Source: Botryllus schlosseri
Taxonomy: Eukaryota
Length of the DNA: 64,000 nt
Assembly (NCBI GenBank): GCA_051294905.1
Contig: CM119380.1
Coordinates: 20,956,001-21,020,000 of the forward strand
Reading direction: 5' to 3'
Shown here: positions 35,137 through 61,199 of the stretch, in pieces
Numbering within the stretch: the stretch's first letter is position 1
Layout of the letters: each line of letters starts with the position of its first letter
Notes under the pieces: generated by a model
The model's database searches: none
The model's input: only the letters and a program-made list of their open reading frames with translations
What the model was told of the DNA's origin: nothing
Position numbers and translations under genes: made by a program

Positions 35137-38100
35137 TTAGTATTCGAAGTTAGTCGGCACGTTGGCGACATTGCGTAAATGCTTCGGTTGCAGCATGGCT
35201 CCGTTGTTGGCGATGTGGTGGTCTTGCTGTTCGCGCTTCAGGAATCTTGCCGCGATTCTAAATTTCGAAAGCATGATTTTTTTATGAAGCTACTCGAGTA
35301 GAAGTAATGCCGTAAATTTCGACTCAATTATAAGTAGAAGTAGCAATTTTGGACACTTGTCAAAATACGTCAAGTGGAAGTAGAAATGAAAGGTTCGAAT
35401 CCGTAAAGTACAAAAGGACTACAAATAGTAGATTAGATCCAGCGGTTTAGCAGAATTGCTAGATGTATCTTCGCGACTGATGGAAAAGGACTGACATTGC
35501 AGGTGGATTTTTCAAAAATAGAGTCCGTCGCCGTGGTACATGGGCAATTACTCCTTTACACGCGACTCTTATGACAAGCTCACTCATATAAGAGCTTTGC
35601 AAACTTATCCCAAAACGACTGACTACTTTTTAAAATCTAAATTGTAAAAATTAAGGTATTTTGCCTAACCCGAAATAGGCCTACTATTCAAGTGGAAATG
35701 GAATAAGCTTGGAAATAACCACTTCAGTAAATAGCTCAAGGTAGCAAAACATACTTGACCACATAAAAAGTACTTCGTTACTGACCACCTCTGGCCGTAA
35801 CGTAGTACGACATTGGCGAGATAGCGTAGTGGTATAATCGACAGCTACAACACCAATGGGTTTTGGGTTCGACTCCAGAATTCCTACCCAAGTGTTGGAG
35901 GTTTATCTAGGCTCCTTCTCGCCATCTTATCCGCGTAAGTGGTGTCTTAGAAAAGGCCTAGAAGTGGTCCGTGCTACAAGTCGGCAGTTACGGAATCCAA
36001 AAATAAGGAATATCGACATGGTGTAAATGACCATTGTAGTCGAAAAACACCGTGAATACCATAAACAACAGCAACAGCACGACATTAATATTCCGCCGTT
36101 TACGTTATGTTAATCGCCGAAGACGCTCATTGTTCATTCGCTCAGTGTGACGTCCAAGTCGCGGTAAGATATTGTCACTTATTGTTGCGATCACCTACAT
36201 TCCATATCATAGATTCGGTACAACCATTACATAATCGTGACGTTGACGTGACCAAATTTGCGGGTGACACATTAATCTCTGGTAATTAACGCGTACGGTA
36301 TTGCTCACCGTTCATTTAATGAATAGACGACGTAGCCTTGCCCCGAAAAGACGCAAAATACTTGAATGTAGGCGAGACATCGTGACGATGGGCAAGATAT
36401 TACCATTACAAACGGATATTAGTTCGATCACTCGTTATATGTTACGATTCGTTGCATGCTATAGATAGCAGAGCGACCGTCACGTATAAGCAAGACACGG
36501 ATTCTCACTCGCCTCAGAATAAGGCGGAGCATGGACTGCAGCCGGATTGGATATCCGGCCGTACTTTTTCATTTTTGACCGAAGCCGGAACAGTAATTTT
36601 ACCGATACGGCCGAAGCCGGACCAGAGAAATGAAAAACAGGATCGAAGTCGTACCAGAGAATGTGTCGATCCGCTCTGCACTACTAGGAAGTGCAGTTTT
36701 TCTCTATTGCACTTATGCGCTGTGGTCGAAATCGGCGAAACACGCAATTTGTGTTTACAGTTTACATTGTACAATAAATACTGTACAAGTGTATAATGTA
36801 CAATTGTACATACTGCTGAACGAGCCTGCCGCCTTCTTCCTGTTCCTTCAATCTGTAAAGTTCTTGCTGTCTCGGATCCACGTATTCCATCAGATCCAGG
36901 GCCTCTTTTACGCGTCGCAAAATTTCGAAATTCTCTCGTCCGCGTATCTAAAAACGAAGTCGCCTCGATAACGCATGGAAATCCGAGAATATACATTTAA
37001 ACAGCTCGCAAGATGAAATGTTAGCAGTTCGGTTCTAAGTTATTAAAATTCGGGCCGCGACCCTTCGAACGTGAATGTGACAGGGTTGCCAGATTAACCC
37101 TTTTGTGGCCACATCCCAAAATTTGGCTCTTTTTAGAGGCAGTTGGCCCCCAAAATTAATTTGGCCCCTTGACCCTTTATTTTCAATATTTGGCTCTTAT
37201 TCGAGGCAATTGAGACATACCATCGAACTGGCTATTCGAATAAATGTATCTCGCAAATTGAGCCGACAATGTTTATGCCAATGTCAAAGATTCGAGTGGA
37301 AACACTGTAGCAGATGAAGATTTGGAATTGTTTTAGTAGAATGTAGAGGTAGAATATGTTTGAATGGTAAATACAGATTTGTGAACAGTTGAACGAAAAA
37401 GCATCGAACATGGCTGGAAGCTAAGTAGCAGAAAAGGTCTGAAGAAGACTACCCTTATAGTACTTATTGATTGATTGAAATTTCAAAGAAAAAAACTTCA
37501 ACATAACCGGATAGTTTTTTGATGAAAAACCTAAAAATTAAGTATATATGTTGGATAAGTTTCAAATGTAAAGAATCTATTCTCTCAATTTTTATTTAAA
37601 ATTCATAAAATTTAATCACTTTCATATAATAACACTAAAAGTTATACATTTTACGATTTTATATTCTAGTGGAAAAGGCTTGAAACAATACGGTAGCATT
37701 TATTGTAGTTGGATCCAGTGTAGTTGTAGGTAGTGAATTTGGTGTCCTACAAATAGTATCAACAATATAAAACTGGAATTCCAGGTGATTGACAAAGGTA
37801 TATGGGTAATTTTGCAACGTTATTGAGCAATTCGGCCTTTTTTGGCCCCTTTTTTCGGCGCAGTTTGGCCCATTTTTCTCAAAAGATGTCTGGCAACCCT
37901 GGAATGTGAGATTTTGCTATTTAGACCTAACAAGCAATAACCGGCGGGGATAATACACAGGACCAAAGCTGCAGCATCAATGGGTTGCTGGTTCAAGTCC
38001 AACCGAGGTCAAGTCCCGAATTCCTACCTAAGTGTTGGAGGTTTATCTCGGCTCCTCGCCATCACATCCGTGTAAGCGGTGTCGTACAAAAGCCTATATG

Positions 38101-41100
38101 TGGGTGCATGTTTTCAAATTATTGTCAGTAATTTGAATTGAAAACACCCCAATTTTGTATGCCACTATTTCGACATTGCCTGCTGCTTCGTGGAATTCGT
38201 GTGTCAGCTGTCAAGGGTTGAGCGCAATGTTGATCACTGATGGCACAGCGTCTAGCGCCTCGCTATGCTCTTGTGAATGCGCTCTAAATCCCCACGAAGG
38301 GGCGAGTCTAAAAGGTTACCTCCACCCCGTAAAACACTACATACCTTTAAAATGTACTCGTCATCATCTCGATCCAACGCGACGCGCTTTCTTTTGCCAA
38401 GAAGGGTGTGTGCTTCGCCTGTAACGCGAGATGCGGATGAAAGCGATGATGGCAACCTATATACCATATGCGGGTGGGCAGTAACGAAGTACTTTTACAT
38501 ATTCGTAGTACTGAAGTACATTTCGTCTTGGTTATGTTTTTGTGACCACTTACATTTCTTACCTTATACTTTTTAGATAGAAATAATTAGTTTTTAGATT
38601 TGGGATTTTGTCGAAGTAGAATGTCGTTTTGGGATATGTTTCCATCACCTTAACTGTGAAATTATTATAACGACCGGACGAAATGGCCCCTGTGTCACGG
38701 TAACTGATATTTCCGAAAATTACACCAATTCGTATTGCGATTAGTCATTTTGCGGTAGCCTCGAATAGGCATCTTGGAATTTTGATAATAGCCACATTCT
38801 ACTTGTAATCGAGCATAATTTTACTGCTGCTTGAGTGGCAATGACTACTTTGACCACCTCATCATCACCACTCAATACCGACGCGGAACAGTAATTCAGC
38901 ATTTTAAAGCAATGTTGTTAAACATTTGAGAGATCAAGCTACTGAGAAAATGGATTGGATCAACCATACCGGTTTCAACTGAGGGTGGCTAGTTAGCTTA
39001 CTAGACTTATCTACACGATTGCACGCGACTACTTACTGACATCCAATCATAGTCTTATTTTTGCTTACCATCGTGCACATCGGCGATTTCCAAGATACCT
39101 TCTTCTCTAAAGTGATTCGGATTGTCTCTCCTCATCGTTCTCTTTTCCTCTTGTGCCCTGTCCCGACCGGGGCAGGAACATATTCTAATCTCCACCGCTC
39201 GCCGACCAAGTACTTGGCCGCTGAAATTGGTACGGTAAGCATTTAGCGGCCTTTCTACTGATAATTTATACCAATTCGAAGAAAATCGTAAGGCTATGTT
39301 AATTGATGCGTGCTGGTTAAAGTAGCCCACGCTGGTACCGAAAGCGTATATAACTAGAAGTAACGTCGTAAATTCATACTAGGTATTAACTAGTAAAAGT
39401 TACGATATCCAAGACACTTCGAAACTACTTCCAGTTGAAGTAGAAAATACAGATATGGAAAGTGCACAAGTAAGTAGTTTCAAAGAGTAGCTTGGGTGAA
39501 AATGTCTCATATTTTAGCAGTTAATTGGAGGTGAGTGCTTTTGACATTACATGGACACGAACAACGTCTTGGTAACTAACTATATGACGTTATCGTTGCA
39601 TGGCTTTGTCAGAACAAAAGCCTTCCCAGTCATTATTATTATTTGCATCGTGGCGCTTATGACCGATTAGGTCTTTTACACCACGTATACGTGATGATTA
39701 GAATACGCAGGATTTCACAGGTACGTATTACACGTTAAAACAAATTCCACAACCGGGGTTACCAATGGGGGAAATGTGAGAAAATTTTCAAGTAAAAATA
39801 CGATACTATAATATTTGCACGATTCCACTATAGAAATCGGCGGTGAAAATCAAATAGAGAACAATACACTATAAAATGCGATGCTGTTTCTGGGGTGCCG
39901 CATGATCCCGATCGGGGTCTCCGAGCATTTGATACGGCATAAATGTGAGTTCAGGAGACAATGACCCGTCATCTGACGGAATAATATACGGTCGTATACC
40001 CGTAGTCATGTGTTTATCGTGATGTCAATCGAATCACGCCAGGGGTTTCGAAGGAGCCTCATTATTGTACCAAACCAAACACCGCAGATATCAAATCCAA
40101 GTTGCTGTATATGCAATACCTATAGATTTAAACTCACTCGACGTTTTCGAAAGTAAACACCAGCATGAGTGGCCGCCTGTTAATCCCGCCAACGCAACTG
40201 GACAAACACATGAATTTGAATAACACCGTCGAGTAGTCTGTACCGACCTGCATCGACAATTTCCAGACTTATGAATCAGAGCGATTAGTCTCAAACCCGG
40301 TCCATACGCTTTACCTGGGGGTCTTCATACAGTATTGATACACTCTCGCGTCCGTCCGCTCCGAAGTTGTACTGCACAGTGTGTCGGTTGCTAGGCATCT
40401 CAACGCGAACCAAATGGTTCACCGGGATGTGGGACGGAGTCGCTAAAGATGAAGGGGAAACTTACGGAGGTAGAAACTACGCTGAAAATTTGAGCTCAAT
40501 TACAAGCGGAATTAGCAATTTCCAAGACATATCAAACTATAGGGTTACCATACGTCCTGTCTTAAGAGGATTTGTCCTCTTTTTTTCACATTTTTGAAAG
40601 TGTCCTCGGAGGACGCCCGAATGTCCTCATTTTGCGAATTTGTCCTCTTTTTTGAAAATTTTGGTTAAACGTATGTTAAAATTCAACTGAGATATAGGAA
40701 ATCAGTACTCAAATAACCGTTCGGCGGTCTTTCGGGAATTGAGTCGAAAAGTTGACCCTTTGTTTAGTCAACCAACTACATACTCGCAATAAATTTACCA
40801 ATGTTTCCGAATTTTACTCCGGTATTGTAAGTCTGGTAATTTTTAAAAAGTGTCCCTTTTCAGATTCCTAAAATATGGAAACCCTATCAAACTATTTCTA
40901 GTAGATATAGAAAATCAAAGGCATGCAAAGCACTAACGTAAGTAGTTTCAAGAACTAGATTTGGTCGCGGGGTCGCAAGATGTATCTTCGCCAGCTATAC
41001 AACGCGAAATGACCATAACAACGCTACACGGTTCCACACACGTAGAATATCTAGAAAATATATTCATATTCAGTTTCGTCATACAGCGGCTATTTAACCC

Positions 41101-44100
41101 GGGTCCTACGACTTTCTACTGAAAAGAGTGCTGCAAACTCATCCTACAACGACTTTATACTTTTTAAATTCTAAATTATGAAAAGTTAGTAGTTTTACCT
41201 AAAATCTGTTCAAGTAGAAATGGAAGTATTCTACAAACATAACCACTTGAGTAAGTATGGTGCAAGTACGCAAACATTACCTGAGTACTCCGCGTATGTA
41301 GAACTACTTCGCTACTGACCACCTCTTGAAACTGAAAACGTTTGTCTCTATTGAATAACCACGATGATGGACTTGAATTCAAATATGTTAAATGGATTTC
41401 GATGTAGGCCTACAAAGTTTGCCAAACTTTATTTGGACGCAGACATGTATTGTCAATTCGGCTAGAATTTTCATGCGGCTCTAAAGAAGATATGGTTTAG
41501 CAACGGCGCTATGTCTGTGCAACGTAGCTAAACAGATGAAGTCGCAATGTCCGAGTCGAAAATTAAGGGGTTAAAGGCTCTTTTCGTCTCACCCAGGCTG
41601 TACCCTTGTATATATGAACACCGAACAGTGAGCAGTCGGCATGACGATGCAAAATATATTTGGTATTTGGATTGGAACGTAGAAAAGCTCGAACAGGAAA
41701 CAATATTTGGATTTAAAATATTTAATCCGCTCATCTCCGCTGCATACCAAGATTTAAATCCCGGCATTCGACAAAAGAAGACGGATCTCAAGATATTTGA
41801 AGAGAAGAATCAACAAATGGAGAGCACGGCGCGTTGTTATATTTGTACAGCTCGTATTTTATAATGAAATCCTTTCCAGTCGTTGTTGGTCTCGTTAATT
41901 CTTTTGACAAAGTACCTTTCAACGGTTTTGGCCTCGTTCGTTAAAATGCTGTATATCTTAAAGACTATTTAAGTTTCTTGGTGAATTGTTATTGAATAGT
42001 TATTTTATATATCTGAAAATGATTTGAGCGTGCTGCTCACAACCTGGCTCATATCTAATGATATTTTATGACGCGTGCCAACAAAAGAGAAAAGTTTATT
42101 GCAGTTGGAAAATCAATAACAGAAGTCGTATGCGTTATGAAGAATTCATTAATGATTTGTTGGTTCGACTAGTACGGAGTACAGACTTGATGTATGAATG
42201 AAACAGTCGGTAACGAGGATTAATGCTATCCTATAGAAGGCATTAATTTTTTCACAGACGACTACGAACATACATATGGTTACTACGAAGACTGAAGCGT
42301 TCCACCTGTGCCTCTCACACTTCCAGAAATATCAACATTACCGGGAAATTGTGATCGTAATTCGTGAGCCTCACGACGCAATCATTAAATCCGCCCTACA
42401 ACGCGGTTATATATCACTTTGGTTCAGGGATGATTTTAGAATCTAAAATCTAACCTAACAATAGCCGTGAGAAACAAAACAAAAAAGGTCCCAAATTGTA
42501 GCAGAATTATCGATTGCACTCCGCATCGAATATATGAGTATTGACAAATTCATCACCGGCTGAGGTACTGGTTGATGTCATCATCAGTGTACTAACGGCG
42601 TCGCCAGGATGCGCACGGCCCCCACAGAATTTTCGACCTGGGCATCATAAGCTTTACTAATCATCGCAGCGGATCCGTGACATCACGTCAGAGTCAGGAT
42701 TTCACCTACGCCAAATTTTGGACTCTGCTGGTGCATACTGCATAGTTACTTCGGCCCGGTTACACGTGAATTGTCATTACAATGCTTTCCCATTTCGTAA
42801 TAAAATCCCAGGCTCTATACCACTCTCTGTGACAGTCTCGGCATCAAACCCTTTACTTACAGTTGTCTGTTATTTTGTGATTCGGGCATCTCGTTACGAT
42901 ATCCTTCATATGCTGCGGCCTTTTAAATACTGGCGTCGCCTTGATAATGCACCCTTGCGGAGGAGGTAGATTGCACTTGAATTGTATCGGACAAGTAACA
43001 TTCATTTTCACGAAAAGCTTGTTCAGCATTGACGAAAACTGAAAGAGCAAGGCACAGTTGTCGCGTTTGCGCCAGTTAAAATCACATCAGCAGTTAACTG
43101 CAATACCGTATATTGCGCATTTTTCGGAGCTGACATTGTCTTTTCTCCAAAGTATATTTCGAATCCGCATTCTCCAGGATAATCGCTGCAATGATGCGTA
43201 AACAGTAAATAACAATGTTGCAGGAGCGTCGCAAAATAACCAAGAGTCAACAGTACAGAGTAATATAGATTGGTGATATCATATAAGCTTGTGACAGACT
43301 TAAAGTTTGGCTTACTTGAGTGGAATAAGGAACTTTTCTGTGGGAACATGGTACTCGAAGGACGGTCCTGGTGCGTACGGACTGTGCGTTGTAACGGCTG
43401 GATCTCCGGTATTCGGACTACTTGTGTGAACGTAAACATTTTGAGTTGAATGGCCGTTTCTGTCCTGCGCGTCAACACCAGATGACTGTGTCGCGTACGC
43501 GGGTATGGTGACCAAACTTCCACCATCGCTTGAGAATACGTTCTAAAAAGGGTTGGATTACGAATTCAATAAATAGAATTAAAATAGCTCCTCCNNNNNN
43601 NNNNNNNNNNNNNNNNNNNNNNNNNNNNNNNNNNNNNNNNNNNNNNNNNNNNNNNNNNNNNNNNNNNNNNNNNNNNNNNNNNNNNNNNNNNNNNNNNNNN
43701 NNNNNNNNNNNNNNNNNNNNNNNNNNNNNNNNNNNNNNNNNNNNNNNNNNNNNNNNNNNNNNNNNNNNNNNNNNNNNNNNNNNNNNNNNNNNNNNNNNNN
43801 NNNNNNNNNNNNNNNNNNNNNNNNNNNNNNNNNNNNNNNNNNNNNNNNNNNNNNNNNNNNNNNNNNNNNNNNNNNNNNNNNNNNNNNNNNNNNNNNNNNN
43901 NNNNNNNNNNNNNNNNNNNNNNNNNNNNNNNNNNNNNNNNNNNNNNNNNNNNNNNNNNNNNNNNNNNNNNNNNNNNNNNNNNNNNNNNNNNNNNNNNNNN
44001 NNNNNNNNNNNNNNNNNNNNNNNNNNNNNNNNNNNNNNNNNNNNNNNNNNNNNNNNNNNNNNNNNNNNNNNNNNNNNNNNNNNNNNNNNNNNNNNNNNNN

Positions 44101-52344: not shown

Positions 52345-52511
52345 TTGTGCCGTTTTTTTTTCTCCTCCATGCTATCCGTGATTGCTGAGCGCCTAGCAGG
52401 ATAGCTGCGGATACCATTTTTCGAGTCTTTGGTATGACCCGGCCGGGGATCGAACCCACGACCTACCGCTCGAGAAGCCGGACGCATAACCATTACACTA
52501 TCTCGCTCGGC
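52345..52511 (-). mobile_element. tRNA-derived SINE, family 1 (Meta-domain-like), full head
   Basis: GCCGAGCGAGATAGTGTAATGG (A box) ... GGGTTCGATCCCCGGCCGGGTCATACCAAAGACTCGAAAAATGGTATCC...CCTGCTAGGCGCTCAGCA. It directly abuts a family-2 SINE. Confidence 0.85.
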
Positions 52512-53094
52512 ATGGCTTTTCGTACGACACCGCATACGCAGTTGGGTCAGCGATGTGGAGCCCAGAGAAACATGGCAGAGCCGAGACTCGAACCAACAAC
52601 CATTGGTGTCGTGACGGCGCACTGCGCCAGTCGCCTCCCCTGCAAATCAGGTAAACGACACTATATAGTATAGGCCCACTGCATACTAGACAGTCTTCAT
52701 CTAAAAAAAAAAAATGAAAAATCTGAAAAAGCGTCGTCGTTTTGCAGAAATGTGGGTTAGAATTGGGATATCATTGAAAGATTTAGGGGTCCGTAATCTC
52801 GAAAATTTTCTGTTAGGGGACCGTAATTTAAAATTTGGCAACCACTGTCGTATAAAAAGGTGACCTCATCCTATCCTGTCTATTGCACGGCGAAGGCTCT
52901 GCTGTCAGTGATTGGTGATTGCTACACATTTCTTGGTGCTATAAATCAGAGCGAGAAGCCAGATTGCAACATAAACAGTATTTTTACAGTTACATGGAAC
53001 AAAACCGATAAAATTTTCCCGTTTTCATTGCACACCGATTTGAAAATTCCTGTAAAAATTCTCCTGCTCCGTACAACAATTGTCGTTCCCATCT

Positions 53095-54268
53095 TCAATT
53101 ATATAGCATATGCGTTGCCTTCGTGATTGTGATATTCTCTTTCGGCGACATATCATCCGCAACTTTCGACTGCTGGATTTTATTGATGACGTCCATACCT
53201 TAACAAGTGATGGTGTGGCAGTAAGTTAGAAAAGTGTAGGGCTGTGCAATCAGAGCATCATCATCAGAGCACATACCATCCATAACGTATCCGAAGGCGA
53301 CGTTAACCTTATCGTAACTTGGTACTTCGTGAGTCGTTACGTAAAATATTGAAGTCTTGTTGCTCTTTCGGTTGTTTTCCAAGCTCAGCATTCCGAGAAA
53401 TCCCGGTCCTGTATGCCGAACCGACAGGTTTTCCTTCTCGAAAGGCTGACCCAACGCACTCTTCCCGCCGCTACCGTCTCCCTCGGTAATATCGCCACCC
53501 TGTTGAATGTTTAGCAGTAATCGCATATCAGTAAAGAAGCGAAAAATGGTGGGTTTTGTTATAGTGAGGTTATTTTACACTAATACAAAACAGAGTCATC
53601 CAAGAATAACCTCGCAAATTAATGCCCGCATTCGTTTAGATTTGCACGTTTGCAGGTGACATAGACCTGTCGCAACAAAGTACAGCCGCACAATCAGAAT
53701 AAGACGAACCCACCATAATTGCGTGCATCGGAAGAATCATGTGGATCCTTGATCCTTTGTATCCAAAGCCTTTCTCATGAGTTGACAGCATAATGAAATT
53801 TTTCGTCGTTAGAGGGCACGTCGATCCAAATAGTCCGAATTCAACGGCACCCAAGTCTTTTCCATTTTGAGTGAACTTGAACCTGATCTATTGTTTATAA
53901 AATAGATTAGTAGGTGCACTAAATGAAACTGGGACCCATCAACTGACCACATCTGTAATCGGCGGAAGATCTTTGAACGGGTCCGTACTCTCTACCGCAA
54001 AATATAGCGTTGACAGCATTAACGACACCACCAGAACCACCGCTAATAAGATCGAATGTTTTTCCAATTCTCCAGCTATATCTGCTTTCAGGTCATCCCA
54101 GTACCTTTGCGAAGCGGACTTTGTGACTTTTGGCTCCCTATTGGTTATTACTCGTTTCGAGGCATTCCCTTTTTTATTCGATTTTTGTTTCTTTGCCGAC
54201 TTTCTTGCCTTCAGGTGCTCATTTTTACGACTCTCCTGGCGGTGACTTGCAGAGTCTTTTCCTTCCAT
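53095..54268 (-). CDS. Membrane-anchored cyclophilin-B-like protein with a degenerate PPIase site, 4 exons, 273 aa
   Basis: Exons 54268-53948, 53887-53714, 53499-53277, 53198-53095, GT-AG and in phase. Lys/Arg-rich N-terminus, TM segment ILLAVVLVVSLMLSTLYFAV, then FGLFG..CP.T..NF, EKGFGYKGS, GGD...GDGSGGKS, F..EN...HTGPG, V.FGYVMDGMDVI. Confidence 0.88.
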
Positions 54269-55259
54269 CGTGCTCCTCCACCGCGAAATCGCCCATCCAC
54301 TGTGGCGTTTCAAATCAACTAGCTGCACAGCTGGCACTACATACCTTACCAACGTCAACAAATCCTTACCAGCATCGCCACGTAAAACAACAGCCCAGTA
54401 CACGTCGGCAGCATTCTACTCGTGCGAGTGCATTGCGGCACTTGGTAATACATGTATATGATGGCTATTGCACTACCAAACTATATGTTGATATTGCTGT
54501 GATACTTATCAGTTATAGAACGCTAAGAAAGCTGTAGTATAATATTGGTTGTTCATTACCAGTCCGTAGATGCCACAAATTGATGTCTGTACCAAGTAGG
54601 CATACCGTTGGGAATATGCATATTTCTCATGAAAATCGAATGTAACGTTCGACAGCTTTCCCCTGTTGCCCGACTAACGTTCAGTCAGCACATACTTATT
54701 ACAGAATCTAGGATCACGCATGATGCTGCAGCTTGCTCATGCAGCTTTGTATACTCAACCGCCTGCAAGTTGCGGCCTAACAGGACAACCCTAACCTATT
54801 CTCTGCATCATAAATACCACACCCGCCAACTGCAGTTCCACTAAACATCCACATATGACGCAAGTGCTACCAATGACGAGCTCCGACGCAAAATAAATAG
54901 TAAATATATATTTGGGAGCCAAACACGCAGCTCCAAACTGCATCGTCATATATCAGCCATCGGATATAAAGTAATCTCATCAAGAATTGCTACATCGCAA
55001 ACTACAAAGTCATGAGACACTGCATTTTTAAAAACATAAACAACCTCAAATGTCCAGGGTAAGCGGCAGAGATGATCTGGTAAAACAAGGAAATCAGATA
55101 CCGGAAGAGCGCACAGATAGTGTGTATGTCAGATGGTAGTTCAAAATGAAAAAATAAAAAAAGACAAGCTAATGACATAGCAATAGTCTCAGCTCGCCCG
55201 TATAGCCTAGGGTTCATTTCATAAGATACGAGAACCTCACGAGATAAACTCGTATTTCA

Positions 55260-58200
55260 TCAAGACAGCTTTCCCATTGAGAATTTCTTGTACATCTCAG
55301 TGGCGGAGAATATAAAAGAGTCCACGATGCCGGCGACAGTAAACGTACCCCCGATGATCGCACATACCTGAAACAGTACGCAAACGATATTGGCGAAAGA
55401 TACTGTCGATTAACTTGACTACCACAGGCGCGTTGTGGGCAAGCATTTCAATTATTCTTATTTCAAACGAGCTGACGTCTTGGAACATCATAAGGTAGCG
55501 AAGTTGTGACACTATTAAAAACCACGCCTGTGGCAACAAGGCCGATGAATATCGATATCGCATTTCTGTACAGTACTTGTACAATGTACCGTACATTGTT
55601 AATGGAGCAAGCAAATAATCAGCAAGCAATACAATGCCATACGCGCAGCAGAGTGACAATCATGATACGTGCTTGGCGAGTAATTCAAAGCAAAATAATC
55701 ACACAAAGCCTGCCGGTGTTTTACAGCAAACTACTGCTTTTTTAGACTATTTCGTCTTTCTCTTCGTTTTTAAGCACCACTACTTACTTTATTCGCTTTT
55801 CATTTTGAAAAATAGGAAGTAGTTATGTGATAAGCTTCCATTGCATTTATGAGTGTCGAGGGAACAGCGCGAAATGGCCACTGTAACTGAATATACTTCT
55901 TAAAATCGCGCCTATGAGTACATTGAGTAGTGTCATTCGTCATTTTGTGCAGTATGAAAAGATATATCCTGCAATTTCTAAAGCAGCTACCACTGATTAA
56001 CTGCTAAAAGTCTACGACACAATATCAAATCTACGTTATTCAACTAAACACTTCAATCTACTTCCTCTTGAAGAAGTTTTGACATCTCTTGGAAATTCCA
56101 ACTTCTACTTGGTGAGCATAAATTCACATTACTTCTACTTCAGTAACAGTACCGGCTACCTTTGACTACCTCTGCATACTTATTTCATTGATCTATTTCT
56201 TGCACAATCACAGAAATGAATCCATCTCTTTTTCTCTCCAACTTAGAATCGGAACGACAACAGCTTTCTGCCTATCTAGACACTAAATATGCCAAACACC
56301 AGTTCTTACCATCGTTATAAAATGATAGAAGGGTTGGCGTCGCTCTTTATAGCTTACAGTGATCGGCATGAGCTCGTACTTGAACCATATCGCGGGCATC
56401 ATCCTATGTCCGTGACCGTAAGCCATATAATTCTAGGAAGAAAAATATCACCTTTTAGTATCAGCTCAACATCAAATTGGAGACGACCAACACTCTTCTT
56501 TGCAACTGAATCAGAGGCAAGCACGAGAAATCCCTACCTTGTACGCAGACGTGTACTGGTAAGCGTACTGCATGCGGCCTCCCAAGTTTTCGTAGACGGT
56601 TGGCACGATTTTCATGATGTAGTCATGAGATGACAAGGCTGCAATGAACGGCGATAGTGAAAAATTTCATGACTTAACAGCTCAAAATCGACAGCCAATC
56701 TATTTTCTGTGACCGTTTATGATCGATGGTGGACCACTGGTCGGTCACACCCAGATTTGTGGAACGCAAACAAAAAATCCGAATAAAGTCGATCCGATGA
56801 AAATCTAGAACAGGGGCAAAAAAATGGAAGTTAAAGTAGTATACATGCCAAACTACTTGAGTAAGTGGATAAAACCTACTCGAACACTACAGAACAGTGA
56901 AAAGCTAAGGATACTGATGACTTTTACTCTTTAGGGATGCGATAAAGATGTGTAGCGCTTGATACGGTGGCGATGAGAACCACGGGATTAGAATATTCCA
57001 GCCAGTAACGGCCTCACAAATATTCTGTGGGGAAAAAATCAACCTATAATTGAATAATACATTCATATTGAGACTCCAATTTTGGTGATACAGCTATCAA
57101 TGTACAAAGTTATTTTGAATGCTATACTAGTTGCTGACGAATGTCAGTCAAAATACTCAAGTTTATTTTAAAATGAATACATTATTTAATTGCGCAGTGA
57201 AGTTCTGTACCTTCAAGGGTATCTTCTAGCTACGCATTTTACTTTACTTTAGTTTTTCCAACTACCACCGTCAAGTCAAGAATATTGTGTCCGTTCAATT
57301 GAATGCACTAGAGTGAAAATTTTGGGCGGATAAGCGTAAGATCAAATATTACTCGTTTAACGAAAAGTAAATGAATGCATGATCGGTGAAAATAGACTCT
57401 ATAATCAGGTTAAATCTCATTTTGAACTTGCCGTGCTGGTTCAAGTTGTTCTTCCCATTTAACGAGGTAAACGCGCGCGATTTGCTGCTGACGGTCTGTA
57501 ACACAACGTACTATTGTCACACATCAATTCCTTAAATCTAACGACACATATGTGACTGAGAATCATGGACGAGGCGATAGGCAGATATATACGAGGGTGG
57601 TTAATTACAAGAGTACCGTAGGTTATTTGACATGCAGGTGTCGAAATTTCGAAAATTCGAAATTTCATGCTGGTGACGTCATATTTTGTGATACGATTGT
57701 TGATATACAATGTTCTTTCCAATTCTCTACTAGTTGCTGACGATTACCCCTGACGAGTGTCAGCCGAAAATATTCGGGTTCATTTCAATATGAATATACT
57801 ATTTAATGATCATATTCTGCAAACAAAGAGCAGGTATATTGGGTGACAGCTCGACCGAGTGACTGGTCAGTAACAAACTAAAAACCCTAACCTAACCCCC
57901 ATCAGTTCAATGGTAACATGAATTTATGAACACAATGCAAGTACAACAGACACTGAGTTGACCCAATATTACTTAAATCAGTGGTTCCCAACCTTTTTTC
58001 GGTGTCAGGGCCAAATTTCGAATTTCAGAGTACGGTCGGGGTCGCACGAATACCAGGGCAATGAAACGGACCCAAAATAGGCATCCAAATATGAAAATAT
58101 GCATTGTTCCGATCAATCGCTTGACGCCATTGGCCATTGTTGTGATAATTGTAATTGTGTTGCTGCGCTCCAATTGTTCAGAACAATCGACCTTTGGTGG

Positions 58201-61199
58201 CTATTTCGGAGTAGTTTTATTGCCTATCAAATTATTGGGACGCTTCGGTCCTGAGCCTTAGGACAACCAATTATGCTGCCTTCAGGGCGGTTTAGTAAGT
58301 CACCTTTGATCGCCTATAGACGCACGAAGCGCGAATATTTTCTACAATTCCTGATTGAATCGGTCAATATGATCGGGAGTTGCATTTATATTGCCATGAA
58401 TTTTCATCCACTATCTGCTCACGTTATCAGTTTTACAGGTAGAGCCGAGGGAGGTGTGTTTGAAAAGTTAGGGCTCCTCAATAATAATTAAACATCTTTG
58501 GGCGTATACTGGTTGCCAGGAACGAAACAGCACTTCGTCACCCCCCCCCCCCCAAAAAAAATGAACTTTGGTCTTGGGCTCCCATAGGGTGATAAACCTA
58601 CTCCTGTCACCTTGTTCGCTTTTGCCACGAAACTAGTTGTACTGCTTAGTGAGCCAGCTAGAAGCGCGAACATTTTCGATTATTCATGATAAAATAGGTC
58701 AATATGATGGGGAATCGCATATATATTCCTATCAATTTGTTGTCCTGTCTGCTCACATTGGGGGTTTGGCGTGTCGCAGTTATGGTCCTGTCTTTACCTA
58801 TATCTATACTATAGCTACTGCTCGTTCAACTGGAAAGTTATGGCACATTGCATTGAAACAACAGTGACGTAACGATAACAGTCTACTCATGACTTTCCTG
58901 CAATATTAATTAAAATCTCAAGACTCCAAGCCAAGCAAGGGTACTTCATAAATATAAATTTTGTTTTTGTCATAACTCGATTTCTTAATATTTTTGGAAG
59001 CCGCAAGAAGGCTACCTGGGGGCCGCGGTTGGGAATCACCGATTTAGATAAATATTTCGGATGTGGAAGACAGATCACTCACCTCAATTTTCTCCCCGAA
59101 TCTTAAAGTTCGAATTTCATGCGTCATATCGGGATTTTGCGGTTGACTGGCCGCGCTGTGGGTCGAAACATGGAAATTCCCGGGAACCTAAAATGGATGC
59201 GACAGTACATGGAAAACCTTTTAATATAAGCCATAACTATTACATTTGCAATCTAAAACTAGTGGTCTGAAAGTACTCGGCCTGTGAAATGATAGGGACG
59301 AAGCCCTTCATAATGCATCTCCGTGACTAACAAAAAATGGCCGATATTAGTGCATTAATATTGATACGAATCTATCCACAACTTGATTATACGTTCGATG
59401 GGTGCGAAACAATATAAAAACTGCAAGTAAAAGGAGATACACTGTCGCTGAAAATCATCAAGTTTCTCTAGATGTCCATAGATCAGAGCAGTTAGAAGTA
59501 CTTGTATAGGTATACGAACCTTATTGAGTTTGAATGAAGACGTGAATAAGCAGCCTTCGCCCCCATTCACAGGTATTTTATCTGTGTTTTCGACAAAACC
59601 AACCTCGTGCCTGCCCATTTCATCTTGGATGTCAACGCCAACATCTAAATCGCAAAACAAATGAACATTATCAAGCAGATTGAAGCTTACTAATAAATTC
59701 AACTCACATTCGCAACGTAATTTGGGCAGAAATATTTCCAAGAATACGGGGATGGTGTCGCCAGACTCAGGATCGTCGACATACAATTCATTGGACCTTT
59801 TAATAAAGAAAAATAATCAAAGAGAGGTAGGTGACACCAAGCAGTCTGGTGAAATGTGACATTATCATGGAATAGACGAGGTACAAGATTGAAAATCATA
59901 CTTACACTTCAACATCTAGGAAGCTAGCGAGTTCTGATATAAATAAGAAGAACATGAACATACATCCGATGACAGATACTGAAATGTAAAAGATGTGCTT
60001 TTAAATTTATGGACAGAATGCCACATGGCGAGATAGGCATTACTTATGGCTCCTGCGGTCGTAGGTTGTGTTAAATCTTTCGGAACTTTCCTATAGATAT
60101 CCAATCTGAAATTAAAAACATTGGTTTTGAGTTTCAAGCGATGCATAAGATCATAACATGGAAACCATATGTCAGCGGCTTACAACAGGTGAGCATAGCT
60201 CACAAAAGCATCCAAGGTGGACTTCATCTCTTTGAAAATTTGTGAAGTTTGTGAAAAGTATAAGTTTGATTTATTTCAATACGAGTTTATTCTTTTGTTC
60301 CAGCATCCATTCAGTTCAGTTCCGTTTATTAGCAATTTTTATCGAGTTTGATACTCCACAAAAATGCGATACAATGAAAAAGATAGGAAGGTGTTGAAAG
60401 GACTCTCGAGTAGTCTTTGGTATCAGACACCCACCTTCGCCTACGGCGATGTAAAGAGGAGGCATGCACACTGAATGAAAAGTAAAGAAGATAATATAAT
60501 AACAACTAACAAGTGACAAAAAATGGGGTGGCGTGTCACGGCCACGGCCCACGGGAGGCGAGATCGATAGGTCAGGTCATGGTCCGGTAATCTTGAGAGC
60601 GGACAAGTATTTTAGTAGAAATTGCTTGTATTATGACTTGAATGTGGACATGCTCGTAAACTGTCGGATGGCCTTCGGGATACTGTTATACACGTCAGGT
60701 TCGGCATATTTATATTTATATTACAAAATTTACTTCACCTCACTGCAAGTTTTTTGACGACCGCTTAATCAGGAGCAAACGTGGGTAACCGAATTTTCAA
60801 ATACCGTGTCACTGCGACATTAATCATGACAAGCAAACAGACCCGGGAATCGGGAATCACAAAATTTATTGCGCGATGAGTTAAGGTTTGTGGTACAGCA
60901 TGCACTGTGTGTGTACTCTGTACAGATTTGAAATGGGCTAATGAATGGTTTATTCGCATAAGGGGCGATACACAATGCTTATAAATTCACCAGTAATAAA
61001 GTGTGGTCTATTATCGCACACCGCAGTTGTGTATCAATAAGTCGGGGTGATCCTATTTACTTAGCAGCTACGATACCGCCGAACTGCATGACGCGTGGCG
61101 CAGTGACACGTATACCACTTGCCAGTAGCTATCCTATCAACTTAAAGATGACTTCGGTTCAAGAAGACTGATTACCCACCTGCGAAAGTCAAACGGCAT
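55260..61199 (-). CDS. ERGIC1: ER-Golgi intermediate compartment protein 1 (ERGIC-32), 10 exons, 289 aa
   Basis: Exons 61199-61180, 60105-60044, 59978-59906, 59796-59708, 59644-59520, 59187-59083, 57495-57432, 56638-56538, 56432-56310, 55367-55260. MPFDFRRLDIYRKVPKDLTQPT, DIQDEMGRHEVG, VPGNFHVSTHS, CAIIGGTFTVAGI. Confidence 0.96.
57979..59041. mobile_element. Older non-autonomous hAT element in ERGIC1 intron 6
   Basis: Ends CAGTGGTTCCCAACC / GGTTGGGAATCACCG. Flanks ACTTAAAT/ATTTAGAT (6/8). Confidence 0.7.
60305..60720 (-). mobile_element. Microsatellite-tailed retroelement family copy in ERGIC1 intron 1
   Basis: Inverse match to ~6690-7080, with an (AACTG)n-type tail at 60305-60325. Confidence 0.7.

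What the first reader, a model, noticed from the sequence alone, without database searches (positions are those of the whole stretch)
53095..54268. Membrane-tethered pseudo-cyclophilin with its whole catalytic pocket replaced
Seen: an intact four-exon ORF with ~70 aa of Lys/Arg-rich N-terminus, one TM helix and a CypB-like domain. By manual alignment to CypA numbering: R55M, F60H, M61A, Q63M, A101L, N102S, Q111I, F113Y, W121S, L122Y and H126N, while structural Gly/Phe motifs remain. Known: R55 is catalytic, and these residues form the proline and cyclosporin pocket. Inference: a type II membrane pseudo-enzyme with a luminal or extracellular domain acting as scaffold, client-specific chaperone (compare Drosophila NinaA, a TM cyclophilin) or receptor. 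It lies ~1 kb downstream of ERGIC1 on the same strand. No described family fits this to my knowledge.
Basis: partly seen in the sequence, partly recalled or inferred. Interest (0 to 1): 0.8.

Follow-up and report, generated by a model that had tools for sequence, protein, structure and literature searches.

The report
Membrane-anchored dead cyclophilin of sea squirts
This is a real, spliced and expressed gene for a cyclophilin B-like protein that has lost its catalytic arginine and most of its proline pocket. It carries a long basic tail and a membrane helix, is conserved across sea squirts, has never been described, and its job is unknown.

Summary
On the minus strand (54268 to 53095), four GT-AG exons encode a 273-aa protein. 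It has a 71-aa Lys/Arg-rich tail, a 21-residue hydrophobic helix and a cyclophilin domain. In that domain Arg55 is Met, and Phe60, Met61, Gln63, Gln111, Phe113, Trp121, Leu122 and His126 are all replaced. A 3-residue insertion remodels the 101-103 wall.

An RNA contig joins all three introns exactly. A poly(A) site lies near 52964, and one RNA run covers the 3' end about 1000-fold.

It is not a decaying copy. Orthologues with the same architecture, the same intron positions and no Arg55 exist in Styela, two Ciona species, Clavelina and two metagenomic ascidian contigs. Styela shares the ERGIC1-gene-p53 order. The genome keeps a normal cyclophilin B elsewhere. The family evolves about twice as fast as its neighbours, but far below saturation.

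Best reading: an ascidian-wide, non-catalytic cyclophilin B-like paralogue. It is probably a type II membrane protein whose dead domain sits in the secretory lumen and acts as a binding module. Topology (anchor versus cleaved signal peptide) and function are inferred, not shown.

Databases auto-name the orthologues 'isomerase 5/6-like'. I found no paper on them. New variant of a known kind; moderate interest.

The parts
53948..54268 (-). Exon 1 (coding part): start codon at 54268-54266, basic tail, hydrophobic helix and short acidic linker ending ...PPITDV
   Evidence: The donor at 53948|53947 is confirmed by an RNA contig joint (53887 to 53948, skipping 60 nt). No in-frame ATG lies upstream before the TAG at 54418-54416.
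54056..54268 (-). Lys/Arg-rich N-terminal tail (residues 1-71), predicted cytosolic
   Evidence: 28% K+R, net +10, pI 10.2. Every orthologue has a basic tail of 60-167 aa, although its sequence is not conserved.
53993..54055 (-). Hydrophobic helix (residues 72-92): predicted signal anchor, or alternatively a signal-peptide core
   Evidence: The best 19-mer has a mean hydropathy of 2.57. It aligns with the signal-peptide core of canonical CypB. The AlphaFold model of the Styela orthologue shows one long helix here.
53888..53947 (-). Intron 1 (60 nt, GT..AG)
53714..53887 (-). Exon 2 (174 nt): first third of the cyclophilin domain. It holds the family-invariant Cys131 (53818-53816), M157 = CypA R55 (53740-53738), H162 = F60, A163 = M61 and M165 = Q63.
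   Evidence: Pfam PF00160, E = 1.3e-5. Residue map. Exon 2 is 174 nt in every orthologue examined.
53500..53713 (-). Intron 2 (214 nt)
   Evidence: RNA contig joint in X1. Seven listed variants fall here, a density of about 3% against about 0.9% in the exons.
53277..53499 (-). Exon 3 (223 nt): from GGD to the end of the barrel. It holds the 3-residue loop insertion (around residues 203-210), I216 = Q111, Y218 = F113, S226 = W121, Y227 = L122 and N231 = H126.
   Evidence: Pfam PF00160, E = 4.3e-8. PDB alignment maps query 1-72 onto CypA 64-132. Residue map.
53199..53276 (-). Intron 3 (78 nt, phase 1)
   Evidence: 466+536 raw RNA reads in X24 and one X1 contig cross it.
53095..53198 (-). Exon 4 (coding part): last strand and helix of the domain, with stop TGA at 53097-53095. 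It has no C-terminal extension and no ER-retrieval tail.
52965..53094 (-). 3' UTR, with the poly(A) addition site at about 52964
   Evidence: 131 X24 reads carry a loose T-run before 52964. Depth drops there.
54269..54465 (-). 5' UTR. It is certain up to 54295 and possibly extends to about 54465. A gap in RNA depth between 54466 and 54900 separates this gene from the ERGIC1 transcript.
   Evidence: An X1 contig reaches 54295. Low X24 depth continues to about 54465. Depth is zero between 54553 and 54813.
55263..60110 (-). Upstream neighbour ERGIC1 (exons matched; last coding exon 55376-55263)
   Evidence: tblastn with pieces of the Styela ERGIC1 locus gives 73% aa identity over 294 codons.
35182..43569 (-). 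Downstream neighbour: a p53/p63/p73-family gene (exons matched)
   Evidence: tblastn with pieces of the Styela p53 locus gives 76% aa identity over 353 codons. The same order ERGIC1 > cyclophilin-like > p53 is found in Styela clava.

Best explanation
The gene encodes a member of an undescribed family found so far only in ascidians. The family is a paralogue of the secretory-pathway cyclophilins (CypB/CypC type) that no longer works as a prolyl isomerase.

Shown:
- The gene is intact, correctly spliced, polyadenylated and, in at least one sample, strongly expressed.
- It is present at one place in each genome or contig examined, and is conserved in all three ascidian orders with identical intron positions.
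- In every member the catalytic Arg55 is a hydrophobic residue (M, L, V or A), Gln63 is M, A or I, and Trp121 and His126 are gone.
- Every member has a long basic N-terminal tail and a hydrophobic helix of about 21 residues.
- The genome keeps a normal CypB elsewhere.

Inferred:
- The helix acts as an uncleaved signal anchor. This would give a type II protein with the basic tail in the cytosol and the dead cyclophilin domain, with its N-glycosylation sequons, in the ER or secretory lumen or on the cell surface.
- The domain works as a non-catalytic binding module. Its still hydrophobic and aromatic groove (M55, H60, M63, Y113, F/Y122) would hold a peptide segment of a client or partner without isomerising it.
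- The basic tail supplies localisation or a cytosolic contact.
For: Gene model and expression. Run X1 holds an RNA contig with all three exact joints. Run X24 has about 1000 junction reads, a poly(A) site and about 1000x depth, against 20-35x for the ERGIC1 3' end in the same run.

Fold. Pfam PF00160 hits three exons. The AlphaFold model of the Styela orthologue has mean pLDDT 88.6. Its best PDB matches are CypB and CypC, with TM-score 0.86-0.89 normalised by target length.

Loss of catalysis. Numbering is anchored on CypA chains. Position 55 reads M/M/M/L/M/V/A across seven members, against R in all four canonical CypB sequences aligned and in 188 of the blastp alignments to the 244 proteins fetched by then, the others being mostly fragments or gaps at that position. 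Arg55 is the invariant catalytic residue, and Phe60, Met61, Gln63, Ala101, Phe113, Trp121, Leu122 and His126 define the site (PMC2911226).

Conservation. Members are Styela XP_039257675, Ciona intestinalis XP_009861216, C. savignyi H2Z2F5, Clavelina CAK8678666, and contigs L007 and L008-L011. The family is monophyletic with 100/97 support. Exon 2 is 174 nt and exon 3 is 223 or 226 nt in all. Synteny with Styela is ERGIC1 > gene > p53. A second shared context, DuoxA | gene > ELO, holds in Ciona and Clavelina, and an ELO-like gene also lies downstream in L007.

Constraint. Between species the domain has pN 0.32-0.41 while pS is 0.77-0.86, which is saturated. Of the variants listed in the CDS, 5 are synonymous and 2 are not, and intron variant density is about 4 times higher.

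Paralogy. A canonical multi-exon CypB with R55, F60, Q63, W121 and H126 sits on another chromosome (C9:16.40 Mb).

Topology. The tails are 60-167 aa, 28-35% K+R, net +10 to +33. The helix scores 2.05-2.57. The flank after the helix is acidic. The helix is not followed by the Pro and small-x-small cleavage motif that canonical CypB has. The domain carries 1-3 N-x-S/T sequons.
Against: - Topology was not tested. The helix is homologous to the signal peptide of canonical CypB, which is conventionally cleaved, so the mature protein could be soluble.
- The former pocket has no newly fixed signature. Its columns are no more conserved than the rest of the domain: mean pairwise identity 0.51 against 0.58, permutation p = 0.26. 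Positions 55, 60, 63, 121 and 126 differ among members. A specific new ligand site is therefore not supported.
- The domain evolves about 2.3 times faster at non-synonymous sites than ERGIC1 and p53 between the same two species: pN 0.37 against 0.15-0.16. This could mean partly relaxed constraint.
- The tree does not place the family firmly inside the CypB/C clade. The stem branch is long.
- There is no protein-level, tissue or partner evidence.
- The window protein itself could not be folded or searched whole, because a spliced product has no reference here. Exon pieces and orthologues stood in for it.
Confidence: 0.6

Rival explanations
1. A soluble, secreted or ER-luminal pseudo-cyclophilin. 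The hydrophobic helix is an unusually N-extended signal peptide that signal peptidase removes. The basic tail then never forms part of the mature protein. It would be a leader peptide, possibly with a role of its own.
For: The helix aligns column for column with the signal-peptide core of canonical ascidian and vertebrate CypB, whose hydrophobic cores are also long at 17-20 residues. Some members have small residues after the helix that could serve as a cleavage site, for example A-V-E-S in the window and S-V-D-A in Clavelina.
Against: A basic tail of 60-167 aa is kept in every member despite fast sequence turnover. That is hard to explain if it is discarded. The Pro-x-x-x-D-A cleavage region of canonical CypB is missing, and no small-x-small motif is conserved across members. 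Long, highly charged N-regions and hydrophobic spans of about 21 residues favour uncleaved signal anchors. That last point is general knowledge and was not tested here.
Confidence: 0.22
2. It is still an enzyme. It would isomerise prolyl bonds, or catalyse some other reaction, through substitute residues such as His54 and His60, or only on special substrates.
For: The groove stays hydrophobic and aromatic. Gly72, Phe112, Gln111 (in 6 of 7 members) and the GGD motif are kept, and His occupies position 60 in 5 of 7 members. A single residue change was enough to activate human PPIL2 (PMC2911226).
Against: Arg55 is replaced in all seven members by an uncharged, mostly hydrophobic residue. Gln63, Trp121 and His126 are lost together with it. 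Human cyclophilins with far milder changes (PPIL2, PPIL6, SDCCAG-10) showed no activity and no cyclosporin binding, and PPIL4, which lacks Arg55, is not expected to be active on standard substrates (it was not assayed). The candidate substitute residues His54 and His60 are not invariant.
Confidence: 0.08
3. A decaying or neutrally drifting duplicate of cyclophilin B, open by chance, or an annotation artefact.
For: It diverges quickly: only 37-39% full-length identity to any orthologue, and 48% in the domain against Styela, where canonical CypB is 79%. The window species has additionally lost Gln111, and Lys97 of the calnexin-binding face.
Against: The reading frame is intact with identical intron positions in seven or more lineages spanning the three ascidian orders. 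Synteny is conserved. Spliced, polyadenylated and abundant RNA is present. pN is 0.32-0.41 while synonymous sites are saturated. Several residues are invariant in the family but absent from canonical CypB: Cys at the V29 position, Ser-Ala-Leu at 77-79, and Tyr113.
Confidence: 0.03
4. The mode of action may be more specific. The basic tail would dock the protein to ribosomes or RNA at the ER (as described for ERj1 and p180), or act as a nuclear-localisation-like signal that sorts it to the inner nuclear membrane (as for yeast Heh1/Heh2). The dead cyclophilin domain would then sit at the translocon exit or in the perinuclear lumen.
For: The only support is composition. All tails are 28-35% K+R, hold several K-K/R-x-K/R motifs, vary in length but never in charge, and are predicted helical next to the membrane in the Styela model. 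The comparisons with ERj1, p180 and Heh1/2 come from memory and not from a test.
Against: The tail has no sequence similarity to any known ribosome-binding or sorting domain; Pfam gives nothing significant on exon 1. Any Lys-rich segment will contain NLS-like motifs. No localisation data exist.
Confidence: 0.12

Closest known systems
Cyclophilin B / cyclophilin C (PPIB, PPIC; ER and secretory-pathway cyclophilins)
   Same: They are the best sequence and structure matches. After the family itself, the top hits are CypB/CypC from animals and fungi. The best PDB folds are 3ICI, 1CYN, 2RMC and 2ESL. The N-terminal hydrophobic helix is followed by the P-x-V/I-T-D-(K)-V lead-in to strand 1, as in CypB.
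   Different: The family lacks Arg55, Phe60, Gln63, Trp121, Leu122 and His126. It has a 3-4 residue insertion in the 101-105 loop and a 60-167 aa basic extension before the helix. It has no C-terminal tail. The residues CypB uses to bind the calnexin/calreticulin P-domain (Lys9, Thr36, Lys97, Lys183; PMC7687155) are not kept in the window protein: P, T, S and absent. A separate, normal CypB exists in the same genome.
Drosophila NinaA (membrane-anchored cyclophilin, rhodopsin chaperone)
   Same: Both are cyclophilin domains tethered to secretory-pathway membranes and facing the lumen. This makes NinaA a model for a client-specific, stoichiometric, chaperone-like role (from general knowledge).
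   Different: NinaA has a cleaved signal peptide and a C-terminal anchor, and it keeps the catalytic arginine (from memory, not tested here). Here the hydrophobic helix is N-terminal. No NinaA-like sequence ranked among the close relatives. The resemblance is analogy, not orthology.
Catalytically inactive human cyclophilins (PPIL2, PPIL6, CWC27/SDCCAG-10, PPIL4)
   Same: They are cyclophilin folds whose active-site substitutions abolish isomerase activity and cyclosporin binding. They are thought to act as binding modules (PMC2911226). PDB 9fqr lists PPIL6 as 'probable inactive'.
   Different: Those proteins are nuclear, spliceosomal or ciliary soluble proteins of other cyclophilin subfamilies, and most still keep Arg55. 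This family derives from the secretory type, loses Arg55 and most of the pocket together, and adds a membrane helix and a basic tail.
Second divergent CypB-like gene of the same genome (locus L016, G000:C2:22949574-22950104)
   Same: It is also CypB-like, also lacks Arg55 (Ser there), and has an N-terminal hydrophobic leader.
   Different: It is intronless, has a short signal peptide without a basic tail, and has GGD changed to GGA. It does not group with the family in the tree, where it is a very long branch.

Membership tests
Cyclophilin-type fold (Pfam PF00160, cyclophilin-like domain) | Significant match to the family profile over the whole domain | tested here: met
   Exon 2 matches profile positions 4-48 (25.9 bits). 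Exon 3 matches 53-128 (34 bits). Both are above the 21.7-bit cut-off. Exon 4 matches 131-158 (14.6 bits, below the cut-off on its own).
Cyclophilin-type fold (Pfam PF00160, cyclophilin-like domain) | Eight-stranded barrel with two helices | tested here: met
   Tested on the Styela orthologue, not on the window protein. The AlphaFold model has pLDDT 88.6 and matches CypB/CypC chains with a target-normalised TM-score of 0.86-0.89.
Active cyclophilin peptidyl-prolyl isomerase | Invariant catalytic Arg55 | tested here: not met
   Met157 in the window protein. Across seven family members the position reads M/M/M/L/M/V/A.
Active cyclophilin peptidyl-prolyl isomerase | Conserved pocket residues Phe60, Met61, Gln63, Ala101, Phe113, Trp121, Leu122 and His126 (PMC2911226) | tested here: not met
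   The window protein has H, A, M, (L or E), Y, S, Y and N. None is retained, and the family as a whole keeps none except a partial Met61.
Active cyclophilin peptidyl-prolyl isomerase | Measurable PPIase activity and cyclosporin A binding | not testable with these tools
   This needs purified protein. Trp or His at position 121 is required for cyclosporin binding, and the window protein has Ser.
Cyclophilin B orthologue (PPIB) | It is the genome's CypB: one-to-one orthology with catalytic residues kept | tested here: not met
   A separate multi-exon gene at G000:C9:16.40 Mb is 79% identical to Styela CypB and keeps all pocket residues. The finding is therefore a paralogue.
Cyclophilin B orthologue (PPIB) | Basic P-domain-binding face (Lys9, Thr36, Lys97, Lys183; Lys97 essential) | tested here: not met
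   The window protein has Pro, Thr, Ser and no tail. Styela has Gly at position 97. The Ciona/Clavelina branch keeps Lys97 only.
Cyclophilin B orthologue (PPIB) | Placement inside the CypB/CypC clade in a tree | tested here: inconclusive
   The family is monophyletic (100/97). However, its long stem (1.14 changes per site) is drawn towards other long branches, and its position relative to CypB and CypA types is not resolved.
NinaA-type membrane cyclophilin | Cleaved signal peptide plus C-terminal transmembrane anchor | tested here: not met
   The only hydrophobic helix is N-terminal (residues 72-92). The protein ends 6-8 residues after the last strand.
Ascidian tail-anchor-dead-cyclophilin family (proposed here) | Basic N-tail, one helix of about 21 residues, a cyclophilin domain without Arg55, invariant Cys (V29 position), Ser-Ala-Leu at 77-79, Tyr113, and a loop insertion after 100 | tested here: met
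   All features are present in the window protein and in Styela, Clavelina, Ciona intestinalis and L009. L007 and the C. savignyi fragment show them as far as their sequence goes.
Ascidian tail-anchor-dead-cyclophilin family (proposed here) | Shared gene structure and synteny | tested here: met
   Exon 2 is 174 nt and exon 3 is 223 or 226 nt, with the same intron phases, in the window, Styela, Clavelina, L009 and L007. The order ERGIC1 > gene > p53 is shared with Styela.
Type II (N-in) single-pass membrane protein | Uncleaved signal anchor, with the N-terminus cytosolic and the C-domain luminal | not testable with these tools
   The charge bias (tail net +10 to +33, acidic flank after the helix), helix length and luminal sequons fit this topology. 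Cleavage cannot be excluded.

The most novel reading that the evidence does not exclude
A chordate-lineage invention: sea squirts turned the signal peptide of cyclophilin B into a signal anchor with a long basic cytosolic tail, and turned the enzyme into a fast-evolving, non-catalytic luminal or extracellular recognition module. This type II receptor or adaptor would link a luminal or extracellular ligand to a cytosolic partner such as ribosomes, RNA, chromatin or acidic lipids. It might act in a tunicate-specific process such as tunic formation, gamete or self/non-self recognition, or dedicated folding of one abundant client.
Probability: 0.15. Interest if true: 0.7.

Novelty: new variant of a known kind. 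Interest (0 to 1): 0.45.

Why it matters
Dead enzymes that are kept for hundreds of millions of years usually mark a second, non-catalytic job for a fold. Cyclophilin pseudo-enzymes are known in the nucleus and spliceosome. A secretory-pathway, membrane-tethered one with a complete loss of the catalytic set has not been described.

This family is conserved across ascidians, including the experimental model Ciona (XP_009861216), so its role can be tested directly by electroporation and CRISPR. It also gives a natural experiment on how a cleaved signal peptide may become a signal anchor.

There is also a practical point. Genome pipelines currently name these proteins 'peptidyl-prolyl cis-trans isomerase 5/6-like', which almost certainly mislabels them as enzymes.

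Tried and rejected
1. A search of the 5.8-billion-protein set with exon 1 (tail plus helix) found nothing. The genome's own proteins appear to be absent from that collection, and the tail is too divergent.

2. The whole spliced protein could not be given to the search, folding or atlas tools, because it has no single reference and I did not type it. I used exon references, orthologue ids and local scripts instead. The fold result therefore refers to the Styela orthologue.

3. An alignment that included the exon 1 and exon 4 pieces misaligned (A1). I discarded it in favour of A2.

4. Candidates outside tunicates were rejected. High-scoring hits from crinoids, a sea anemone and a chytrid (P0251, P0253-P0255) are tandem two-domain cyclophilins with Arg55 intact. 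A Diplonema protein with Lys55 (P0055) has a different architecture, and it is the nearest row to the family in the tree with only weak support (91/67), most likely long-branch attraction.

5. The idea of an adaptor for the calnexin cycle was rejected for this species. The essential Lys97 is Ser in the window, inside an N-L-S sequon, and Gly in Styela.

6. Quantitative dN/dS between species failed because synonymous sites are saturated, with pS 0.77-0.87 even in the neighbouring genes. Only 'pN well below pS' can be stated.

7. Polymorphism among the metagenomic contigs L008-L011 was uninformative, with 0 differences in the CDS and 4 in 1544 intron bases.

8. An operon or read-through with ERGIC1 was rejected. 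RNA depth falls to zero between the two genes.

9. Exon 4 of the L007 orthologue was not found. The Ciona intestinalis gene model could not be rebuilt exactly from locus L023.

10. Seven literature searches, including accession numbers, found no paper on this family.

11. ARAGORN found no tRNA in the SINE-like stretch at 52434-52673.
Full report
WHAT IS THERE. The finding lies on the minus strand. Reading the reverse complement of 53000-54420 and joining four exons (54268-53948, 53887-53714, 53499-53277, 53198-53095) gives an open frame of 822 nt, or 273 aa, with GT-AG at all three introns. Pfam's cyclophilin model PF00160 hits exons 2, 3 and 4 separately and colinearly, at profile positions 4-48, 53-128 and 131-158. 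Exon 1 encodes a 71-residue tail (28% Lys+Arg, net +10, pI 10.2), a 21-residue hydrophobic helix (residues 72-92; best 19-mer mean hydropathy 2.57) and a short acidic linker. The locus is single-copy in the 495-Mb genome, and the best paralogue is only 44% identical over exon 3.

THE GENE MODEL IS CONFIRMED BY RNA. I laid four public runs on 52900-55500.
- Run X1 holds a 726-nt contig that joins 53198|53277, 53499|53714 and 53887|53948. These are exactly the three predicted introns, and they settle the choice of the GTCAGT donor and the 273-aa form.
- Run X24 (raw RNA reads) has 466+536 reads across the last intron.
- X24 also shows a poly(A) addition site at about 52964 and a depth of 700-1000x over the 3' exons. 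The 3' end of the neighbouring ERGIC1 reaches only 20-35x in the same run.
- Run X12 covers exons and introns evenly, so it is genomic DNA.
- RNA depth falls to zero between 54553 and 54813, so the gene is not a read-through of ERGIC1.
- No in-frame ATG lies upstream before a TAG at 54418-54416.

THE POCKET SUBSTITUTIONS ARE REAL. HMMER against all PDB chains aligns exon 3 residues 1-72 with human CypA residues 64-132 (1AK4, 165 aa). That fixes the numbering. The window protein has the following changes:

| CypA position | Window residue |
|---|---|
| R55 | M157 |
| F60 | H |
| M61 | A |
| Q63 | M |
| Q111 | I |
| F113 | Y |
| W121 | S |
| L122 | Y |
| H126 | N |

A 3-residue insertion sits in the 101-105 loop. 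HMMER and MAFFT instead give E-N-N at 101-103. Either way the wall is rebuilt. Arg55 is the invariant catalytic residue, and the other positions define the proline and cyclosporin surface (PMC2911226).

IT IS A CONSERVED FAMILY, NOT A DECAYING COPY. An exhaustive HMMER pass of exon 3 over 1.84 billion representatives gave nothing above 57% identity. Local BLAST of the full protein against the hits then picked out two proteins that align beyond the domain or share the substitutions:
- Styela clava XP_039257675 (259 aa; 38-39% identity over 251-258 aa, including the tail and helix);
- Ciona savignyi H2Z2F5 (a fragment).

A profile search added two more:
- Ciona intestinalis XP_009861216 / XP_078487348 (301 aa);
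- Clavelina lepadiformis CAK8678666 / XP_076824915 (268 aa in one gene model, 296 aa in the other).

Short ORF fragments led to genomic contigs from an ENA assembly (L007) and from JGI metagenomes (L008-L011). From these I rebuilt two further orthologues.

All members share the following features.
- A basic tail of 60-167 aa (28-35% K+R, net +10 to +33), a helix of about 21 residues, and a cyclophilin domain.
- Position 55 reads M, M, M, L, M, V or A, and is never Arg or Lys.
- Position 63 is M, A or I.
- Position 60 is H (5 of 7), Q or R.
- Trp121 and His126 are never kept.
- Some residues are invariant in the family but absent from canonical CypB: a Cys at the V29 position (C131 here), Ser-Ala-Leu at 77-79, and Tyr113.
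- Exon 2 is 174 nt and exon 3 is 223 nt (226 in Styela), with identical phases, wherever I could determine them.
- In a maximum-likelihood tree the family is one clade (100/97) on a long stem.

Synteny also supports orthology.
- In Styela the order is ERGIC1 > gene > p53 on one strand.
- In the window, ERGIC1 exons lie at 60110-55263, the gene at 54268-53095 and p53-family exons at 43569-35182, all on the minus strand.
- Ciona and Clavelina share a different context, DuoxA | gene > ELO > ELO, and L007 also has an ELO-like gene downstream.
- The window species therefore groups with Styela and is probably a stolidobranch ascidian.

CONSTRAINT. Between species, synonymous sites are saturated everywhere (pS 0.77-0.87), including in ERGIC1 and p53, so a numerical dN/dS is not available. 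Non-synonymous differences in the domain are 0.32-0.41 per site, well below saturation. Against Styela the domain has pN 0.37, compared with 0.15-0.16 in the two flanking genes. Amino-acid identity is 48% in the domain and 38% full length, against 73-76% for the neighbours and 79% for canonical CypB. The family therefore evolves about twice as fast as its neighbours but is clearly constrained. Within the species, the variants listed in the CDS are 5 synonymous and 2 non-synonymous (V243I, and N43K in the tail). Intron 2 carries about four times the variant density of the exons. That list was truncated by the tool, so this is only suggestive. The former active-site columns are no more and no less conserved than the rest of the domain (0.51 against 0.58 mean pairwise identity, p = 0.26), whereas in canonical CypB they are almost invariant (0.96). 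The special constraint on the site is gone, and no equally sharp new signature has replaced it.

RELATION TO CYCLOPHILIN B. After the family itself, the best sequence hits are CypB/CypC of animals and fungi. The AlphaFold model of the Styela orthologue (pLDDT 88.6) matches CypB and CypC structures best. The helix plus the P-x-(V/I)-T-D-(K)-V lead-in aligns with the signal peptide and first strand of canonical CypB. The tree cannot place the long stem reliably. I therefore call the family CypB-like by similarity, not by resolved phylogeny. The genome keeps an ordinary multi-exon CypB with every catalytic residue at C9:16.40 Mb, so the finding is an extra paralogue.

HOW IT PROBABLY WORKS. The shown facts are loss of the catalytic set, retention of the fold, a conserved tail and helix, and expression. 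The rest is inference.
- The strongly positive N-side, the acidic flank after the helix, the helix length, the loss of the Pro-x-x-x-D-A cleavage region of CypB, and one to three N-x-S/T sequons in the domain (N189, N212 and N261 here) all fit an uncleaved signal anchor. That would put the tail in the cytosol and the domain in the lumen or outside the cell. I put this at about 65%.
- The groove is still lined by hydrophobic and aromatic residues (M55, H60, M63, Y113, F/Y122). The most economical function is therefore non-catalytic binding of a peptide segment of a client or partner, as proposed for the inactive human cyclophilins.
- One concrete version, recruitment to the calnexin/calreticulin P-domain as in CypB, fails for this species. 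The essential Lys97 is Ser here and Gly in Styela, and Lys9 and the C-terminal Lys183 are missing.
- The main rival, at about 22%, is that the helix is still cleaved and the mature protein is soluble. A recent paper argues that even human CypB may be held at the ER membrane by its N-terminal helix (PMC13084196). This shows that the point is not trivial to call from sequence.
- Ideas about what the basic tail contacts (ribosome, RNA, chromatin, lipids) rest on composition alone.

NOVELTY AND SCORE. Catalytically dead cyclophilin domains are a known kind (PPIL2, PPIL6, CWC27 and PPIL4), and a membrane-tethered luminal cyclophilin is known (NinaA; from general knowledge). What I found described nowhere is this combination:
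- derived from the secretory type;
- all catalytic and cyclosporin-contact residues lost together;
- an N-terminal anchor with a long basic tail;
- conserved across the ascidians sampled (the three orders represented by Styela, Ciona and Clavelina), and not detected outside tunicates.

The orthologues are in the databases only under automatic enzyme names. I rate it a new variant of a known kind, with interest 0.45. It is solid, testable in Ciona and a useful annotation correction, but it does not overturn anything, and its function is still open.

LIMITS. The spliced window protein could not be submitted whole to the search and folding tools. The fold evidence comes from an orthologue. Tissue and sample identities of the RNA runs are coded. 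Taxon sampling is limited to what the collections hold.

Noticed in passing
G000:C2:22949574-22950104 (locus L016:1399-2085), not in the window: A second divergent CypB-like gene in the same genome. It is one intronless open frame of about 220 aa with a short hydrophobic leader. Arg55 is replaced by Ser, His54 by Thr, GGD by GGA, and Trp121/His126 are changed. It sits on a very long branch and does not group with the family studied here. It could be another dead cyclophilin or a retrogene.
   Followed up: partly
window 35182-43569 (-) and 55263-60110 (-): The p53/p63/p73-family gene and ERGIC1 flank the finding in the same order and orientation as in Styela clava. Their amino-acid identity to Styela is 76% and 73%, although synonymous sites are saturated (pS 0.84-0.87).
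   Followed up: yes
loci L022, L023 and L007: In Clavelina and Ciona intestinalis the orthologue lies between DuoxA (opposite strand) and two ELO fatty-acid elongase genes, instead of between ERGIC1 and p53. Contig L007 also has an ELO-like gene downstream. This is one relocation that separates the two ascidian groups.
   Followed up: partly
window 55880-56185: A dispersed repeat of about 300 bp inside the last ERGIC1 intron region. It has 40 or more copies on many chromosomes at 67-92% identity.
   Followed up: no
window 52434-52673: A stretch whose translation (…GIEPTT…) looks like a tRNA-derived SINE, just downstream of the gene's poly(A) site. ARAGORN finds no tRNA there.
   Followed up: partly
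window 54270-54272: A 3-nt deletion polymorphism directly 5' of the start codon, seen in 4 of 7 reads in run X24. It lies outside the reading frame.
   Followed up: no
window 53439-53444 (reads of run X24): Hundreds of reads end here with loose letters that look like the reverse complement of a SMART-type template-switch oligo (recognised from memory, not checked). This would be a library artefact, not a transcript end. It explains the abrupt fall in depth 5' of exon 3 in that run.
   Followed up: yes
window 53776 to 54215 (-): Five X24 reads join these two points, skipping 438 nt with AT..AG ends. This would delete part of exons 1 and 2. The support is too weak to call an isoform.
   Followed up: no
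G000:C11:7341385-7344115, C3:34594548-34595039, C2:8822746-8823231: Several intronless CypA-like genes with intact catalytic residues, two of them in tandem on C11.
   Followed up: no
locus L007:8078-8689: The orthologue on this contig has an N-terminal tail of about 167 residues that is almost a Lys/Glu/Thr/Asn low-complexity repeat (net +33). This shows that the tail's length is free while its charge is kept.
   Followed up: partly
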